In this document: positions 21,476 to 28,915 of the stretch, piece by piece | Position numbering within the stretch: position 1 is the first letter of the stretch | Layout of the letters: each line of letters starts with the position of its first letter | Assembly: GCA_907165135.1 (NCBI GenBank) | Contig: OU015566.1 | Location: forward strand, 8,370,001-8,434,000 | Direction: 5' to 3' | DNA length: 64,000 nucleotides | DNA from: Oikopleura dioica | Lineage: Eukaryota > Animalia > Chordata | Notes under the pieces: model-generated | The model's input: the letters and a program-made list of their open reading frames with translations, nothing else | What the model was told of the DNA's origin: nothing | Databases searched by the model: none | Made by a program: the position numbers and the translations under genes

Positions 21476-24400
21476 ATGGGCGACTTGGCGACGGAAATCG
21501 AGCAAATGGAGGCGGAAATCCATGCTTTGGATGATCAACTGGAGTAAGACATTTCAATTTGTTCTTTGCTTTATCTTTTGATACTAGAAATGGAGAAAAG
21601 GATGAAGATACAACGAAATCAAAGAGCATCTTCTCGAGGTACTGATTTGTGAGTTTACGTGGAGGTAAAAAGTGGTGGTTCTAGGGTTGGCAAGAACGAT
21701 TCAAGGAGGAAAGAAGACGGCGACGACGACGAAGAAAAGGAGGATGACGACAGTCCTAGAAAACGACGATCGGTGAATAAATAAAAAAATCTAATTGTTT
21801 TTAACAAAGCTCTAGCTTAAATCTGCTGTATACGAGACCGGGCGCCGAAGAGAGAGTGACATCTCCAAAGAAACGATTAAACAGGCGCAGATAGGTAAAA
21901 CACTGTTTTTTTTTTTAGGTTTACTCCCACTTTGTCCCAACGGCATTCGAAATCCTTACATGTAACCCCCATACTTCTATATATTTTCTGAAAGCCCAGA
22001 CTCTGCTGCGTGTCCTCGTCTGGGTCTCGTGACCTAGGTCAGGTCACATAACCTCAAATGACCCCGTCAAAGTTGGACTTCTCTAAAAATCATATTTTTG
22101 ACTGTTTTTTTATATTTAAAAACATTTTAAATAAATGAAAAAATGTCATTAATGTCAGTAAAGGTCACCTGAGGTCACGGTGACCTCGGATGACCTTTTT
22201 TCTTGTTTTTTTTTCAAATATGATAAAAATGAAGGAAATTCAACGGAGAATCATAAAAAACAACTTATGATGTTATTTTATAACGTTCATCACGTGAAAA
22301 CCCTCTCCGAATCGTCGCTTATTTCAATTGGTGTTCTTTTGTGTTTTTTGCTTTGCTTCTTCCCTGCTTCTTTTCCCTGATTCTGAAAATCAATCCGCTC
22401 CTTTCTAGATTTCAATTCTTCTTTTCTTTCTTCTTGATTCTCTAGACTTTTTCCTTTCCTCTCTGGCGAATCAAACGCACGAGAAACATAAAAAATCGAC
22501 ATTTGAAAAGAGCAATTTTAATTTTTGCCTCTTTTCAATATGAGAAAGAGAAAACGTCCCTGTATGAGGACCGGATGGATAAAATCGTCTGTTTTTACGT
22601 CCGAGACCTAACTATGGGTCAGAAATAAGAATATATAAAGGTTCTCCGGCAACCGGTTGTCATTGAACTAGGGTCATTGAGCCGGTTGCCGGATGGTGTG
22701 AAGTCCACGCGTTGGCACCCATAATCCGATGGTTGTGTAGGGTTATGGGTTTGATAACGAGTTTGAACAGCTCCAGATGTCAACCCCGTAGCGTAGAAAC
22801 TCGTTTCTTCGCTGTGGTTAGTAGGTAGTTACATAAAAACAGAGGTTACCATTTATTTACAATAGGTACTGTTTATTAAGTAAAGACTCGAAAATTCGGA
22901 TACACTAACCAATAAGAAACCAGTATTTTTTGCGTCAGCCAATCAGAGCCAGTATTTTTTGCGTCAGCCAATCATGGCCAGTTTTTTGCGCCAACCAACC
23001 GGAGGCCAGTATTTTTGCGTCAGCCAATCAGAGGCCAGTATTTTTGCGTCAGCCAATCAGGGCCAGTATTTTTCGCGTCAGCCAATCAGCATCTAGAAAA
23101 GATTAATTGTCCGAATTTTCGAGTTTTTATTCAATAAACAGTACCTTTTGTAGATAAATGTTAATATCTGCTTTTATGTAGCTACAAAACACGGTATTCA
23201 CACATTCTCACGAGTTACATTTAACACTTTCATGTGTTAGATGTTACTCGTGAGAAAGTGTGCGTACGTATAACCACAGAAAGAATGACGAGCTTTGCGC
23301 TACGAATCTATGGAAGACACTAAGCTGTACCCATTAACGAATTTTGTCTTACCATATCCCCCTTGACTTTTGTCAAGGATTTTCGCGACGGTCACCGTTG
23401 TCCCCAGGTCCAATAGAAAATTTTCCTTGTGTTTCGACTGTTTTATCAGTACCCGATCAACTCTCTATCTGGCAGTGGACTTTGCTTCAGACTGGCACTG
23501 TATCGGCCACGATAGGTTTTGAGAGGGATAGGCGAGCAAGGATCTTCAAGGGTGTTTTCGACTAAAGTAGTATGTGATTTGAAGATCTTTGTGTTGACTC
23601 TTGGGTCCCCATCCCCTTATTAAATTTTATTGAGACAAGAGTTTCCAAGAAATATTCTTTTCTTGTAAATGAAACTCATGGTTGCCCTAGGGTTACCGTC
23701 GCGCAGCACAGGGAGAGCCTGAACCGGATGAGGGACAAGATGTTGAGATGGAAGGAGCCGAGGAGATCGATCAGGAAAGAATGAAATCATGATATATTTT
23801 CTTTGTCAACAGATAAGGACTCGTATGATTAATCCTTTGTAAGCTTTTCCCGTATGAAGAAGGAGCACTTGATAATCTCCTGAAAGCATTTCGTCATGCG
23901 ATGGCTGTAGATGTCCGCTCACTCCCAGCCGATTCAAAGGTCCTTGTCAATCAGCTGCGCAGTATTGGTCTGGGTGATGTTGAGATGCTCCCCGAGGCAA
24001 TGAACGAAGCTGGCCTCGCGCACGTGCCGCTACCAAGAGAGCTCAATAAAAAAAGGCCGAGAGCAGTTATTCAAAATGACCAGCCGGCACAAATGACGAT
24101 CAAAAGACGGCGATCGTCAAATGTAACAGATAACCCTGCAGTCCGAGCGGTCGTGAGGGACTTCCTGGAGCATTTCTCCGACACAGCTCCTCTTCCGAGA
24201 CCGCGCGATTATGTGAAGGGTGTCGATGGAGAGCTTGTACTGAAGCATTACCTGATGTTCTCAGGGAATCAAATGTTTGATCTCTACGAAGAAGTGCAAG
24301 ATCCTGAAGAACGCGTGAGCAGATCAGCTTTTTTGAAGATTATGAAGTCTTTGAAAATTTTTGTGCAGCCATCTGAAAGAATGCTAAAGACTTGCGCTTG

Positions 24401-27400
24401 TGAATGCTGTGAACAAAGTGCGGCTTTTGCCGAAGCAATAAGCGATGCCGGAATTCTCATTCGACCCGACGCTCTTCTGCGTAAGTCGATTTGCAACCGC
24501 GCCGAACAAAGTATGGAAGAAAGGAGGAAATGTTGGGACAGGGATTGTCCAACCTGCAAAACAGAGCAGTATGTACGACAGAATGTAGAGGAATTACTGG
24601 CGGAAATCCATCCTGATACGCAGATCACATGGACTGAATACAAAAATGGCCAGTTTGGTCCAGAAGCACATGAAAAGGTCGCCCAGAAAAATGAGTTCAT
24701 CGTCAAGCTTGTTGCGTACCTTCACAACGGTCAAAACGGATGCGGCGCGGGACCTCGACCTGTCACACATCTAGAGATGCGAAAACAGTCGAAAGAATTC
24801 CTTGCCTCGCTGAAGGATGCTGCTAAAAATCGCCGCCTTATGATGTTTACTGCAGATTTCGGTAGATTTATACTAAACGAAATGTATCTAATTGATTCTT
24901 AGCTATGGGTATCCAACAGAGGCTGCCTGTTGAAAATGCAGCGATGCACTGGAACCCTGCAAGCTGGCCAGTTTTATCAGCTGTTTCTTACTTTGGCGAC
25001 AGCAAAGTTTACGGTCACATCCTTGCAGAGCTCAATACCGCGAAAAGCCTTATGGTTGTCGATGGTTACAAAAGGCTTCTGGCTTCAATTGTGCGGGATA
25101 ATCTTTTGGGATTCGATGAGGACGCGAAGCCAAGGACGTTGATATTAGAATCCGATGGCGCTGAGAAGGTTGTCAAATATAAAGAAAGCAGTAGTTAACG
25201 ATTTTATTTTCAGGAATTTTGGACTGCTATTCTTTGGCGTCAGATTCCGGCGATGATGGAAGAGTTGAGGGAGGAAACAGGGTGGAGTCCGGATAACCTC
25301 ATCGTTTGCAAGAGAATTAAAGGCCACGGCAAGGGGGTTAGTCTAATAAAGTTAAAACTTTTTTCACGCGTGCACCTTAGGAGGTCGACGCATCTCATTC
25401 TGCGATAAAGAGAGATGTCAGGCGCGCGATGGAGCTACGAGGTGTTGAAAGACAGAACGCTGCCCGTCGGAGAGCTGGATTTGAGTAAGAGAACGCATGT
25501 GATTAGCCTATTTTCAATTATTTAGGTCGGCCGATGAGATAATGAATTATCTTGTGGGATTGCCGGCGTATGGAGAGCTTGAGGATCGACCCGAAGATGA
25601 AACAGGATTCAGACTTCGCGGTCGTCTTGTTGAGGTTACAAATCCAGAGGGACAAGTACAACCCGGACAGAGAGGCATCCTTGGATCCCGAAGAGTCTTT
25701 TTCGTGAGATTCTTAAAGGAGAATGGGCGATTTCGGGAAGATTTTATTGACGTGAGGCGTCACTGTTGCCTGTGTGAACACTGCCTACAAGGTTCTTTCT
25801 GTGACACCGATTGGGAAAGAAAGAGTCTTGCTTAATACGAGAGTGCATGAGGGTATTTTAGATTGCTTCGGACCCGACGATAAACAGAAAAGCCGCCCGA
25901 GCTGCTAAAAGCATTGATCGTAGAAAAAAGGTAAATAAAATGCTTGATTAATATGTGAAACTCTTGTCTCAATCAAACAAAAATCGTTAAATTTCTGTTT
26001 AGTGGAAGGCTTGGAAGGTCGGATGGTTGAAGATGTCACCGAACGCTGAACCCTTTGATGTGAAGAGCTTGAACTTGTGACTCGAGGCCCCGGTGCCTTG
26101 CCGTGGAGTTCGCTGCTCTCGGCCGAAGAGTTCTCGAGATTCATCACGCTGCCAGGGTCGCACGCTCCAGGGATCTCGGCCATAGATCGTAATCCAGATC
26201 TCCCTACGCTCATTGTCAGCGTGAGTTAGCTCGTCATCACCATAGAAGACCCTGTCGTATACCACACGATAGATCTTCTGAAATGCATTCGCCAAGTTTG
26301 CCCGCGCCCGCCTAGCCTCCACCGGATTATCCGATACCGATAGTCTCATGTCTATGAAGCCTGAACGGCGATGTTCAGGTTCATATTGCCGACGGTGGTT
26401 CGGCATTGTCCGCAATGGACGGCCTCGAATGCGTGTTCCTGTATGAAGTGCGCCAGGCTTGATCTCACAGAAATCAAGAGCACACTCTTCCTTAACTCGG
26501 GCGCAAGTCTCTGTCAATTCTTGCGCCAGAACATTGTAGTTGTTATGTATAAGGATCCGCATTCTAAACTGAACATTCGTTACTGTCTTGTCTGAGAATC
26601 TGATGAAGAATGACTCGAAAGAATCATTTTCATGGTAAGATTCGAACCCACACGCTTTCAGCCGCAGCCAGCGACTTACTTACTTAGCCAAACTGGCTCG
26701 GAGAACAGCCGCTATCAACCCCTATTTAAACCGAAAAAAATCTGAGCGCGAAAAAATGGGAGGAGCGAGTATTCATGCAAACTGACCAAATTTTATAAGA
26801 TAGAAGGCTTAGCCTATCACAAAACATCTGTGAGGTCACTTGAGTTCACTTGAGGTCATTCGAGGTCATTCGAGGTCAATGAGAACCTTTGTTAATGGCG
26901 GATGAATATTTACTATTTAGACATTTAATTCGTCTTATTACCTTATTATGAATCAATAAAGGTCATTTGAGGTCATCTGAGGTCATTTGAGGTCATGACA
27001 TGCCTTCCTCATGGATAAGTGAATATTTGACGAATTAAGAGATGAAATTTGCATCATTCTGTTATCATTGGTTGTTTTTTGTCATTTGAGGTCATCTGAG
27101 GTCATCTGAGGTCATTTGAGGTCATTTGGTGTCAAGACGATGAATAGTCTTAGGAATTGTAATTGAATACAATGTATTCATTTGATTTCTTTGAAATCAA
27201 GTTTTATAGGTCATTTGGGGTCAGAGTGACCTTGAATGACCTTTGAATACTAATAATTTAAAAAAGACGAGTTTTAAGTCGATTTGTATCGTCTTTTGAA
27301 AGCATTTTCAATGTATAAACAAGATTTCCTTGATGACCGACTTCAGCGAGGTCATTTGAGGTCACCTGACCTCGCCGAGGTCACAAGACCTAGACGAGGA

Positions 27401-28915
27401 CACGCAGCAAGGTCTGGGCTTTCTAAAAATATATAGATGTACGGGGCCTACACCTAAGGATTTCGAATGCCGTTGGGACAAAGTGGGAGTAAACCTAAAA
27501 AAAACAGTGTTTAAGTTGTTAAAATTTTGCTCGTGGATCTATCTTTTTTGAATAGGTGATGAGAAGCAGAAGCGTGGAGCGAGAAGAATGTTTGCATCCC
27601 TTTTAGGGACACTGAGGTTTGGAACGTTTCCAATAATAACCATCTAACGCGCATTTGATTGAAGAACTTTTGATAAAGAGCAGAAGAAGTCAAAATCTGC
27701 TGAGAAGCGAAAAGAAGTCGAGCAGAAAGTAGAAGAGAGGGTCGCAGCTGATAGGAGAAAACTTCATGTGAGTACTGTAATGTTGAATATTCTAGAGCTG
27801 TTTGTTTTTAGGAAGAACGAAAGGAGCTGCTGCAGAAAAAGCGCGAGAAAGAAAGACTCCTGGATCTTTTGGAACAGAAGAAGGAGCTTTCTGAATTGGT
27901 TTGAACCGAGAGTAGTGAAAATTTCGTAAATTGAGCATTCTAGCGTCCCGACTGGGAAGAGAACTTCCACGAACGGAGCAAATATATCCAGACGAAAACT
28001 GAGCCGCACATCTTTTGGAAACCGCGTATTCCAGATGCGAGAAGCAAGGAGCTGTTAAAGAAATCTCAGAAGATTGTTGAAGGTAAGAGATTGCCTATGT
28101 GTTCAGTTTGTCTAATCTGTGACCTTTTCTAGAACAATTGGATGAAGCAAAACAGTCCTGGGCCTCGTTCAAGCGCGAGTTGACAAGCCAGATTGAAGAT
28201 TTGAAGGAGAACAACAACTTCAGCGGTAAGCCGAAAATTTCTAGAGTACCTAATTGACATCTTATCTACAATTAGGCAAAGAGGAGAACGGTAAAGCGGA
28301 AGAAAAGGAAAGAATTCCAATCAGCAAGCGGCTCGTGATCACCAGAAGGATCGTCAATGACAAGCGAGTGGTTATGCCAAAAGAGGATATCAAGGAAGAG
28401 AAAAGGGAGGAAGAAAAGAAGCCACGTGAGTGCCATTGTTATTTGTAAGAGGATGATTGAAATTTTCTAGTGACGAAAAAGAGCGACGACGGGAAATTGA
28501 AAATCAACGAAAACGACGACACCGATCAGACTCTTCAGATAGTGAATCTGATCAGGAAAAGTCCCCAAGAAAGGTGCGCCTTTCTCTAATTTACACTACT
28601 CGTCATACCTGTTTTAGCCAGTAGCGAAGAAAGAAAAGACCGAAGACACCCCAATAAAGGATGTTCGCCGAGTAGCCTCGAAATCGGAGGAAAAGGATGA
28701 TCCCCTGCCAGTGAAAACAACGAGACGGGTTTCGTTGAAGAAAACTGAAGATTCGAAACGGTATTCAACCTATCAATTGTTTTTGGTAACTAAAGAAAAT
28801 TTGAAGGACGAAGAAGGTCAGAAAAGTTTCTTCTCGATCAACAAGAAAAAGATCTTCGTCCAGCTCGTCTTCAAGCGGATCATCTGAGTCATCCTCTTCT
28901 GAGGGCGAAGGATAG
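21476..28915 (+). CDS. PNN: Pinin, with a 5.6-kb transposon in one intron
   Basis: N-terminal exons at 21476-21894. The gene resumes after the transposon with GDEKQKRGARRMFASLLGTL...KSAEKRKEVEQK...YIQTKTEPHIFWKP (Pinin_SDK_memA). RS/Ser-rich tail; stop at 28913-28915. Confidence 0.88.
22825..23185. repeat. About 75-bp inverted repeat arms enclosing the CCAAT array (possible nested MITE)
   Basis: 22825-22900 (GTAGTTACATAAAAACAG...GACTCGAAAATTCGGA) pairs with 23110-23185 with a few mismatches. No clear TSD. Confidence 0.75.
22920..23090 (+). repeat. Six tandem units of about 28-29 bp carrying TGCGTCA and AGCCAATCAG
   Basis: Unit CCAGTATTTTTGCGTCAGCCAATCAGRG is repeated six times, one copy degenerate. 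Confidence 0.9.
23901..25835 (+). CDS. DDD-type transposase (Sola2-like), 5 exons, 587 aa as spliced, no internal stops
   Basis: Exons 23901-24861, 24903-25168, 25214-25336, 25381-25484 and 25526-25835 join in frame through GT-AG introns of 41-45 bp. Motifs: CACECC, C-x(n)-C-x4-C-x2-C, ADF...MHW, ESDG, GHGKGEVD...AIKR, ILGSRR and a C-terminal CxCxxC. An extra 5' exon near 23690-23773 is possible. Confidence 0.85.
25999..26562 (-). CDS. Transposon cargo ORF (187 aa), convergent with the transposase
   Basis: Open ATG-to-TAA frame in GC-richer sequence, with a TTTAG acceptor-like site 1 nt before the ATG. It has only a weak recalled resemblance to STAR-type KH-QUA2. Confidence 0.6.
   Translation of the reverse strand: MRILIHNNYNVLAQELTETCARVKEECALDFCEIKPGALHTGTRIRGRPLRTMPNHRRQYEPEHRRSGFIDMRLSVSDNPVEARRARANLANAFQKIYRVVYDRVFYGDDELTHADNERREIWITIYGRDPWSVRPWQRDESRELFGREQRTPRQGTGASSHKFKLFTSKGSAFGDIFNHPTFQAFH
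26633..26697 (-). other. tRNA-like sequence with Pol III A-box and B-box; not a functional tRNA
   Basis: The minus strand reads GCCAGTT-TGGCTAAGT...GTGGG-TTCGAAT-CTTAC. The A-box sits at tRNA positions 8-16, and the B-box GGTTCGAATC lies in a T-arm that pairs. The acceptor stem does not pair and the anticodon loop is short. Confidence 0.5.
26831..27370 (+). repeat. Subterminal arrays of the 10-bp unit (T/C)GAGGTCA(T/C)(T/C)
   Basis: Clusters at 26831-26880, 26960-26997, 27087-27135 and 27350-27370. Fewer copies occur near the left end (22027-22063, 22161-22196). Confidence 0.85.

What the first reader, a model, noticed from the sequence alone, without database searches (positions are those of the whole stretch)
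21895..27514. Intact Sola2-like transposon whose ends and target site do not fit the described superfamily
Seen: the ends are CACTG...CAGTG, and the flanks read gg-TAA|AA-CACTG ... CAGTG-TT|TAA-g. That allows either a 3-bp TAA duplication with AACACTG termini, or a TSD-free insertion between AAA and TTT. No 4-bp duplication is present. Established (from memory): Sola elements make 4-bp TSDs and Sola2 ends are GRG. CACTG-like ends typify CACTA/Transib-type elements, and AAA|TTT insertion without TSD typifies Spy. The transposase motifs (DF..HW, SDG, HGKG..D, flanking Cys clusters) look Sola2-like. Inference: a possibly new lineage, and potentially active because the ORF is uninterrupted.
Basis: partly seen in the sequence, partly recalled or inferred. 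Interest (0 to 1): 0.75.

Follow-up and report, generated by a model that had tools for sequence, protein, structure and literature searches.

The report
Sola2-like transposon making 3-base duplications
This is a complete-looking 5.6-kb cut-and-paste jumping gene in an intron of the Pinin gene of the tunicate Oikopleura dioica; its enzyme resembles the rare Sola2 transposases, but all 12 complete copies of its family duplicate 3 target bases instead of the 4 described for Sola, and it carries a second conserved gene of unknown function.

Summary
The element is window 21899-27511 (5,613 bp). It ends in AACACTG...CAGTGTT, has about 180-nt terminal inverted repeats (TIRs), and is flanked by TAA/TAA.

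I found 11 more complete copies in the same genome: miniature (MITE) copies of about 246-380 bp and gene-less copies of 2.5 and 3.2 kb. All 12 copies have a perfect 3-bp target-site duplication (TSD) of the form WNW. No other boundary or TSD length fits any copy. The TSD-free, Spy-like reading and a 4-bp TSD are therefore rejected.

The transposase is not one ORF. It has five exons separated by four 41-45-nt GT-AG introns (587 codons, no stop), collinear with an annotated O. dioica protein. Its clade is small: 30 hits among 1.84 billion proteins. A profile comparison links it to an arthropod DFSENY/SD/HGKG-D family (99.8%). Its three catalytic blocks match published Sola2 transposases, but only by eye.

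Five elements of other Sola2-like families in this genome also make 3-bp TSDs, so this looks like a trait of the lineage. The scan has already noted two such elements elsewhere in this genome.

New here: the element carries a second, antisense 187-codon gene under purifying selection.

Current activity is unproven. This is the only coding copy, and the MITE copies are 4-6% diverged.

The parts
21896..21898 (.). Left copy of the 3-bp target-site duplication (TAA). Its T is the T of the host intron's GT donor.
21899..22081 (+). Left terminal inverted repeat, beginning AACACTG, then a run of 11 T, then AGGTTTACTCCCAC.
   Evidence: arms 21909-22081 / 27332-27504, 86%.
22030..22196 (.). Left subterminal AGGTCA/TGACCT motifs (7 copies), likely transposase-binding sites.
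   Evidence: 26 of the 41 AGGTCA/TGACCT sites in the 64-kb window lie in the two subterminal regions.
22825..23185 (.). Internal non-coding block: a 76-nt inverted repeat (22825-22900 / 23110-23185) enclosing a 29-bp tandem repeat (22920-23089, 5.9 copies).
23901..24861 (+). Transposase exon 1 (320 codons plus 1 nt). It holds the Cys/His clusters and the first catalytic Asp (TADF).
24903..25168 (+). Transposase exon 2, ending at the second catalytic Asp (ESDGAEK). The preceding intron is 24862-24902 (41 nt, GT-AG).
25214..25336 (+). Transposase exon 3 (41 codons), ending GHGKG. The preceding intron is 25169-25213 (45 nt).
25381..25484 (+). Transposase exon 4, beginning EVDASH, which holds the third catalytic Asp. 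The preceding intron is 25337-25380 (44 nt).
25526..25835 (+). Transposase exon 5 with a C-terminal Cys cluster and the stop codon. The preceding intron is 25485-25525 (41 nt).
26002..26562 (-). Second gene (ORF2, 187 codons), tail-to-tail with the transposase gene. Function unknown.
   Evidence: 88% amino-acid identity to a truncated sister element on contig C3. Differences by codon position are 11/12/46.
26831..27128 (+). Three arrays of 4-5 tandem 10-bp GAGGTCAT(T/C)T units (26831-26878, 26960-26996, 27081-27128), likely transposase-binding sites.
27332..27511 (-). Right terminal inverted repeat, ending CAGTGTT.
27512..27514 (.). Right copy of the 3-bp target-site duplication (TAA).
21895..27555 (+). 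Probable host (Pinin) intron that took the insertion. It is 45 nt without the element (GTAAGT...AATAG) and 5,661 nt with it. The element lies in the same orientation as Pinin.
   Evidence: The intron is inferred from GT-AG ends and a continuous reading frame, not from RNA.

Best explanation
This is an autonomous-looking cut-and-paste DNA transposon of Oikopleura dioica (Okinawa assembly OKI2018_I69). Its spliced 587-codon gene encodes an RNase H-fold DDD transposase of a small clade related to Sola2. The three catalytic Asp residues lie in TADF, SDGA and HGKG-EVD.

Inferred mechanism: the enzyme binds the long TIRs and the 10-bp GAGGTCAT subterminal arrays. It excises the element at AACACTG...CAGTGTT. 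It reinserts it with cuts staggered by 3 bases at A/T-rich WNW targets, which produces 3-bp duplications instead of the 4-bp described for Sola.

The same ends mobilised several non-autonomous families: MITEs of 246 and about 380 bp, and gene-less elements of 2.5 and 3.2 kb. The element also carries a second gene under selection, whose role is unknown and may be accessory.

Shown: the structure, the TSD, the gene model, the homology and the selection on ORF2. Inferred: catalysis, binding sites and present-day activity.
For: TSD: 12 of 12 complete copies have a perfect 3-bp duplication at the AACACTG/CAGTGTT boundary, and no copy fits any other boundary shift (-3 to +3) with a TSD of 3-9 bp. 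The chance of a random 3-mer match is 0.019 per copy.

Gene model: four GT-AG introns of 41-45 nt, every exon piece open, and all five exons collinear with CBY14293.1 of O. dioica at about 27-41% identity per exon. Paralogous families share the intron positions after TDYG and after GHGKG.

Fold: the AlphaFold core of the homologue has the order beta1-3, alpha, beta4, alpha, beta5, alpha. The top PDB matches are all RNase H-like: PIWI, UvrC C-terminal half, RSV integrase and RNase HI.

Family: the profile of the Oikopleura clade against an independent arthropod family gives hhalign probability 99.8%, E 4.7e-28 over 347 columns, with DF-, SD- and HGKG-D blocks aligned. The same blocks appear in Sola2_DFa-2 and Sola2_PPa-1 as MDFKEN/CDFKEN, WSDGAKHF/WCDNARHF and YHGKSDVD/YHGKSECD.

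Other evidence: five elements of other Sola2-like families in this genome have 3-bp TSDs (TGA, TCA, TAA, TAA, CAA). The subterminal repeats are strongly enriched. This is the only locus encoding this transposase.
Against: No statistical comparison with a named Sola2, Sola1, Sola3, Zator or CMC reference was possible. The Sola2 link rests on short motifs compared by eye, plus homology to unnamed proteins. The exon-1 profile did not reach any protein I could tie to the dictyostelid Sola2 elements (names and sources were looked up for 8 of the 30 hits).

The first motif differs from the Sola2 references (DF-AMG instead of DF-x-EN). The structure model has low confidence (mean pLDDT 54).

There is no RNA evidence for the introns. 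There are no near-identical copies: MITEs within a subfamily are 94-96% identical and the element's own TIR arms are 86% identical, so recent activity is not shown.
Confidence: 0.75

Rival explanations
1. It belongs to an undescribed DDD/E superfamily or deep branch that only resembles Sola2 in short catalytic motifs. The 3-bp TSD and odd termini would then be ancestral traits of a separate lineage.
For: No Pfam model matches any piece or homologue. The exon-1 profile found only 30 relatives among 1.84 billion proteins. The TSD length differs from every Sola description I could read. The first motif is DF-AMG, not DF-x-EN.
Against: All three catalytic blocks, their order and similar spacing, and the upstream Cys/His clusters are shared with Sola2_DFa-2/PPa-1. 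Strong profile homology (99.8%) joins the clade to a DFSENY/SD/HGKG-D family that looks like the published Sola2 references.
Confidence: 0.15
2. It is a Zator element. Zator is the other superfamily recalled as making 3-bp TSDs.
For: Only the 3-bp TSD. That Zator makes 3-bp TSDs is from memory of Bao et al. 2009, which I could not read here.
Against: No Pfam transposase family of any kind matched, even at E up to 10 for the paralogue first exons and several homologues (E up to 1 for the window's own main exons). From memory, Zator is related to bacterial ISAzo13-type transposases and so should match such a model. The HGKG-x-x-D block is the one seen in the Sola2 references.
Confidence: 0.04
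3. It is a CACTA/CMC- or Transib-type element, as the CACTG ends suggest.
For: CACTG is present near both ends, and the TSD is 3 bp as in CACTA.
Against: CACTG is set back 2 nt from the TSD in all 12 copies, so the true terminus is AACACTG (ATCACTG in one copy). The second and third Asp are only about 50 residues apart, with no large insertion domain between them, unlike CMC and Transib as I recall them. No CMC or RAG1 Pfam match was found. A 5-bp TSD fits no copy.
Confidence: 0.03
4. It is a Spy-like (PHIS) element that inserts between AAA and TTT without a duplication.
For: This one copy reads TAAAA|CACTG...CAGTG|TTTAA.
Against: Across copies, the three bases outside AACACTG vary and are always repeated directly on the other side: TGT, TCT, ATT, ATA, TAT, AAT, AAA and TAA. 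Only the 2 TAA copies of 12 could fit AAA|TTT. No PIF/Harbinger DDE_Tnp_4 match was found.
Confidence: 0.01

Closest known systems
Sola2 group of the Sola superfamily (Bao et al. 2009). The references I could read are Sola2_DFa-2 and Sola2_PPa-1 of dictyostelids (PMC3627910).
   Same: TIR-bounded cut-and-paste element. One large transposase with Cys/His clusters upstream of a DDD core. The three blocks D-F, S/C-D-G/N-A and H-G-K-x-x-x-D come in the same order with similar spacing. TIR length falls within the wide range reported for Sola (11-1124 bp, PMC10741241).
   Different: 3-bp WNW duplication instead of 4 bp (AWWT, ATAT and similar). Termini are AACACTG, whereas the dictyostelid Sola2 ends shown begin with G. 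The first block is DF-AMG, not DF-x-EN. The gene has four tiny introns. There is a second conserved gene that is not a Fanzor.
Other Sola2-like families of the same O. dioica genome (loci at C2:3.93 Mb, C2:5.25 Mb, C4:7.87 Mb, C3:2.40 Mb and C4:3.50 Mb), and CBY14293.1 of the Bergen strain.
   Same: Homologous transposase (24-38% identity). Introns in the same places. Long TIRs (190-340 nt). 3-bp TSDs.
   Different: Their termini are GGTGG/GGCGC, and their targets look like GC-TNA-GC palindromes. No counterpart of ORF2 was found in them.
CACTA (EnSpm/CMC) elements
   Same: 3-bp TSD, a CACTG-like motif at the ends, and arrays of short subterminal repeats.
   Different: The motif is offset by 2 nt from the TSD. 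The transposase shows no CMC similarity and has a short D-to-D spacing.
Spy / PIF-Harbinger (PHIS)
   Same: A/T-rich 3-base target context. This one copy happens to sit in AAA...TTT.
   Different: A true duplication is present in every copy. The transposase is not PIF-like.

Membership tests
Sola2 (Sola superfamily) | DDD transposase with the Sola2 catalytic blocks | tested here: inconclusive
   The blocks TADF / ESDGAEKEFW / GHGKGEVDASH match MDFKEN / WSDGAKHF / YHGKSDVDRHF of Sola2_DFa-2, but only by eye. hhalign gives 99.8% to an unnamed DFSENY/SD/HGKG-D family. No named Sola2 sequence was available by reference, so no score against one could be computed.
Sola2 (Sola superfamily) | 4-bp target-site duplication | tested here: not met
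   3 bp in 12 of 12 copies and 4 bp in none. The literature gives 4 bp.
   TIRs are present. The termini are AACACTG, not G-initial like the dictyostelid Sola2 ends. However, Sola termini are described as very variable, and I could not read the original definition.
Spy (PHIS) | Insertion between AAA and TTT with no TSD; PIF-like transposase | tested here: not met
   Direct 3-bp repeats in 12 of 12 copies. Only 2 of 12 are compatible with AAA|TTT. No DDE_Tnp_4 match.
CACTA / CMC | CACTA/CACTG exactly at the termini next to a 2-4-bp TSD; CMC-type transposase | tested here: not met
   The TSD length fits, but CACTG is 2 nt inside the boundary in all copies. No CMC Pfam family matched. The second and third Asp are about 50 residues apart.
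PIF/Harbinger | TWA 3-bp TSD; DDE_Tnp_4 transposase plus a Myb-like second protein | tested here: not met
   Only 2 of the 12 TSDs are TAA (both within TWA, and no TTA); the rest are AAA, TGT, TCT, ATT, ATA, TAT and AAT. No Pfam match for the transposase or for ORF2.
Zator | 3-bp TSD; transposase related to bacterial ISAzo13/TP36 elements | tested here: inconclusive
   The TSD length fits. No Pfam transposase family matched, at E up to 10 for the paralogue first exons and several homologues and at E up to 1 for the window's own main exons. No Zator reference was available for a direct test.
RNase H-like DDE/D transposases in general | RNase H fold with acidic residues on beta1, after beta4, and on the helix after beta5 | tested here: met
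   The model of the homologue P0008 has this strand and helix order around the three Asp blocks. The Foldseek top hits are all RNase H-like. The model's confidence is low (pLDDT 54).

The most novel reading that the evidence does not exclude
Appendicularians harbour a distinct branch of Sola-type DDD transposons whose synaptic complex cuts targets with a 3-base rather than a 4-base stagger. In this family the element needs, or benefits from, a second element-encoded protein (ORF2). This single intact copy is still able to mobilise itself and its MITEs.
Probability: 0.3. Interest if true: 0.55.

Novelty: new variant of a known kind. Interest (0 to 1): 0.42.

Why it matters
TSD length is one of the main criteria used to classify DNA transposons, and especially their non-autonomous copies. 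A Sola2-related lineage that makes 3-bp WNW or TNA duplications would be misfiled as CACTA, Harbinger or Zator by TSD-based rules. It also shows that the cut stagger can shift within this little-studied group, for which no structure or biochemistry exists.

O. dioica has a very compact, repeat-poor genome with tiny introns. An intact two-gene element with matching MITEs is a candidate native transposon for this model animal. It is also a natural case of a 45-nt intron enlarged more than 100-fold, with the insertion sitting on its splice donor.

Tried and rejected
- Pfam scans of every exon piece, of the paralogues and of database homologues found no family.
- Word-based protein searches gave nothing beyond the queries' own clades. 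The open frame containing exon 1 found nothing. The full-length alignment found only P0008 and one fragment. P0025 found only unnamed Logan proteins plus one firefly protein.
- The ESM Atlas gave unnamed rotifer and mollusc clusters for exon 1 and nothing usable for ORF2.
- A PDB sequence search with the family profile found nothing.
- A scan of metagenome contigs for the terminal motif returned only chance matches. None extends into the TIR.
I therefore could not fetch the Bergen contig of CBY14293.1, the contigs of the distant relatives, or an empty Pinin allele.
- Bao et al. 2009 and Yuan & Wessler 2011 are not held. The Sola2 alignment supplement of PMC3627910 is unreadable as stored.
- The AlphaFold model of ORF2 had low confidence, and its fold search gave no significant match. 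ARAGORN found no tRNA in the element.
- Left out on purpose: joining the five exons into one protein for searches or folding, and feeding the published Sola2 sequences to any tool, because they have no reference id.
Full report
**Where this is**

The window lies in a 64,281,565-bp assembly of 19 contigs. That is exactly the length listed for Oikopleura dioica OKI2018_I69_1.0, the Okinawa lineage, in Table 1 of PMC11067885. The nearest named database relative of the element's protein is CBY14293.1, an unnamed protein of O. dioica. The 41-45-nt introns seen here also suit this species. Earlier notes of the scan give the same organism.

**The observation**

- The left junction reads ggTAA|AACACTG, then a run of 11 T, then AGGTTTACTCCCAC. 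The right junction reads CAGTGTT|TAAg.
- The inverted-repeat arms are 21909-22081 and 27332-27504: 173 nt, 86% complementary. They reach the termini once the unequal T-runs are allowed for.
- The element is therefore 21899-27511 (5,613 bp), flanked by TAA at 21896-21898 and 27512-27514.

**Which target-site duplication (TSD)**

- A search of the genome with the left TIR, and then with the terminal motif, found 25 motif matches against 4 in the reversed-pattern control.
- These matches resolve into 12 complete elements:
  - this one;
  - eight MITEs of about 373-380 bp in two subfamilies (one of them carries a nested 0.9-kb insertion);
  - one 246-bp MITE;
  - two gene-less elements of 2.5 and 3.2 kb.
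- With the boundary at AACACTG...CAGTGTT, all 12 have a perfect 3-bp direct repeat: TAA, AAA, TGT, ATT, TAA, ATA, AAA, TCT, TAT, AAT, AAA, AAA.
- I tested every boundary shift from -3 to +3 and every TSD length from 2 to 9. Only shift 0 with length 3 scores 12 of 12. Every other combination with a length of 3 or more scores 0.
- Two random 3-mers of this window match with probability 0.019, so chance is excluded.
- The duplications all fit W-N-W.
- The Spy-like reading would need AAA on the left and TTT on the right. Only the two TAA copies allow that, so it is rejected. A 4-bp TSD is also rejected.

**The transposase gene**

The six-frame reading gives several open pieces, not one ORF. Four GT-AG introns join them:

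| Intron | Coordinates | Length |
|---|---|---|
| 1 | 24862-24902 | 41 nt |
| 2 | 25169-25213 | 45 nt |
| 3 | 25337-25380 | 44 nt |
| 4 | 25485-25525 | 41 nt |

- The exons are 23901-24861, 24903-25168, 25214-25336, 25381-25484 and 25526-25835.
- By arithmetic on phases this is 587 codons, with split codons GCT and GAG. Each exon piece is open.
All comparisons were made exon by exon, by reference.
- All five exons align in order with the 612-residue CBY14293.1 at about 27-41% identity. The junctions fall at TADF|A-MG, SDGAEK|EFW, GHGKG|EVD and RRAGF-E|SADEI.
- Paralogous families in the genome have introns at the same TDYG|AMG and GHGKG|EID positions.
- The frame is therefore intact, but only as a spliced gene. 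No RNA evidence was available.

**What kind of transposase**

- No Pfam family matches any piece or homologue.
- A profile of exon 1 from this element and three paralogues was searched against 1.84 billion proteins. It found only 30 proteins at E of 0.001 or better. They include O. dioica proteins, unnamed marine-metagenome fragments and a few distant proteins.
- The distant ones belong to a family that includes a firefly protein. Its consensus carries DFSENY, SD...QYRNK and HGKG..DG.
- A profile of the Oikopleura clade, built without those proteins, matches that family at hhalign probability 99.8%, E 4.7e-28, over 347 columns. The three blocks are aligned.
- The only named Sola2 transposases I could read are Sola2_DFa-2 and Sola2_PPa-1, in a supplement of PMC3627910. 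They show the same three blocks (MDFKEN/CDFKEN, WSDGAKHF/WCDNARHF, YHGKSDVD/YHGKSECD) and similar upstream Cys/His clusters.
- This last link is by eye only. Those sequences have no reference id, so I gave them to no tool, and no score against a named Sola2 exists in this report.
- An AlphaFold model of CBY14293.1 with the family alignment has low confidence (mean pLDDT 54). It still places the three Asp blocks on beta1, after beta4 and on the helix after beta5. Its best PDB matches are all RNase H-like: PIWI, UvrC C-terminal half, RSV integrase and RNase HI.
- The second and third Asp are about 50 residues apart, with no insertion domain between them.

**Comparison with the literature**

- Sola elements are described as DDD transposons with 4-bp TSDs and very variable termini (PMC10741241).
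- The only held paper that combines the terms Sola2 and 3-bp is that same paper. I did not check the context of its single 3-bp mention.
- The defining 4-bp TSD was tested here and not met. I therefore describe this as a lineage related to Sola2, not a member in the strict sense.

**Is the 3-bp TSD a feature of the lineage?**

I fetched five other Sola2-like loci of this genome.

- Each has TIRs of 190-340 nt with GGTGG/GGCGC termini.
- Each has a 3-bp duplication (TGA, TCA, TAA, TAA, CAA), often inside a GC-TNA-GC palindrome.
Another note (s1-365277) reports the same for a further locus.

So the scan has seen this before on other DNA of this genome. What this window adds is a family with different ends (AACACTG), a different target (WNW), its own MITEs and a second gene.

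**Other anatomy**

- AGGTCA/TGACCT motifs are concentrated in the subterminal regions: 26 of the 41 in the 64-kb window.
- On the right they form three arrays of 4-5 tandem 10-bp GAGGTCAT(T/C)T units. I take these to be transposase-binding sites; this is an inference.
- Between the left TIR and the gene lies a 29-bp tandem repeat enclosed by a 76-nt inverted repeat.

**A second gene**

- On the minus strand, 26562 to 26002 is a 187-codon ORF lying tail-to-tail with the transposase gene.
- A truncated sister element on contig C3 shares the terminus, the subterminal arrays and ORF2 codons 1-143, then breaks off.
- That copy is 84% identical in DNA but 88% identical in protein, and its only indel is 6 nt.
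- The differences fall 11, 12 and 46 on codon positions 1, 2 and 3. That is the signature of purifying selection.
- The ORF has no Pfam match, no useful Atlas neighbour, and no confident fold.
ARAGORN finds no tRNA there, although a GGTTCGAATC box lies upstream of the ORF.

**Host context**

- The exons after the element encode the Pinin_SDK_memA domain.
- Removing the element and one TAA leaves AG|GTAAGTTG...TTGAATAG|GT, a 45-nt GT-AG intron with a consensus donor.
- The duplicated TAA is positions +2 to +4 of that donor. The donor now reads GTAAAA and the intron is 5,661 nt.
- The element lies in the sense orientation.
- The intron is inferred from its ends and a continuous reading frame. 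The Pinin start codon is not resolved.

**Activity**

- This is the only locus in the genome encoding this transposase, and its frame is intact.
- Against recent activity: MITE copies within a subfamily are 94-96% identical, the two TIR arms are 86% identical, and I could obtain no population data.
- "Potentially active" is possible but not shown.

**Limits**

- The original Sola paper and the catalytic-domain survey are not held.
- Metagenome scans gave nothing real.
- No Repbase references were available, so no phylogeny against Sola1, Sola2, Sola3, Zator or CMC could be built.

Noticed in passing
window 26002-26562 (minus strand); L182:3660-4088: The element carries a second, antisense 187-codon gene. 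A truncated sister element on contig C3 keeps its first 143 codons, with differences concentrated at third codon positions (11/12/46). It has no known family or fold.
   Followed up: partly
G000 C2:3.93 Mb, C2:5.25 Mb, C4:7.87 Mb, C3:2.40 Mb, C4:3.50 Mb (L023-L034): Five other Sola2-like elements have TIRs of 190-340 nt, GGTGG/GGCGC termini and 3-bp TSDs (TGA, TCA, TAA, TAA, CAA). Their targets often form a GC-TNA-GC palindrome. Their first intron holds a minisatellite that reads through as a repeated peptide.
   Followed up: partly
L060 (C4:10735442-10738612) and L061 (C2:5442513-5445049): Two gene-less 3.2-kb and 2.5-kb elements share the AACACTG ends. The first sits in a perfect 7-bp palindromic target (GATTGAC AAA GTCAATC).
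   Followed up: no
L004:1283-2557: One MITE copy is interrupted by a nested insertion of about 0.9 kb from another element. Its own ATT duplication is still intact.
   Followed up: no
L012, L013, L014 (C1:6.95 Mb, C3:0.40 Mb, C3:0.036 Mb): Three copies of a MITE end with a degenerate AACAATG terminus share the same flanking sequence. The fragment was probably carried along inside a larger repeat.
   Followed up: no
window 21700-21830: The upstream gene ends at about 21778 with an AATAAA overlapping its stop, about 40 nt before the first recognisable Pinin exon. This layout looks like an Oikopleura operon. No in-frame ATG precedes the intron.
   Followed up: no
window 26640-26700 (minus strand): A GGTTCGAATC box, like a Pol III B box, lies upstream of ORF2. 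No tRNA is predicted there.
   Followed up: partly
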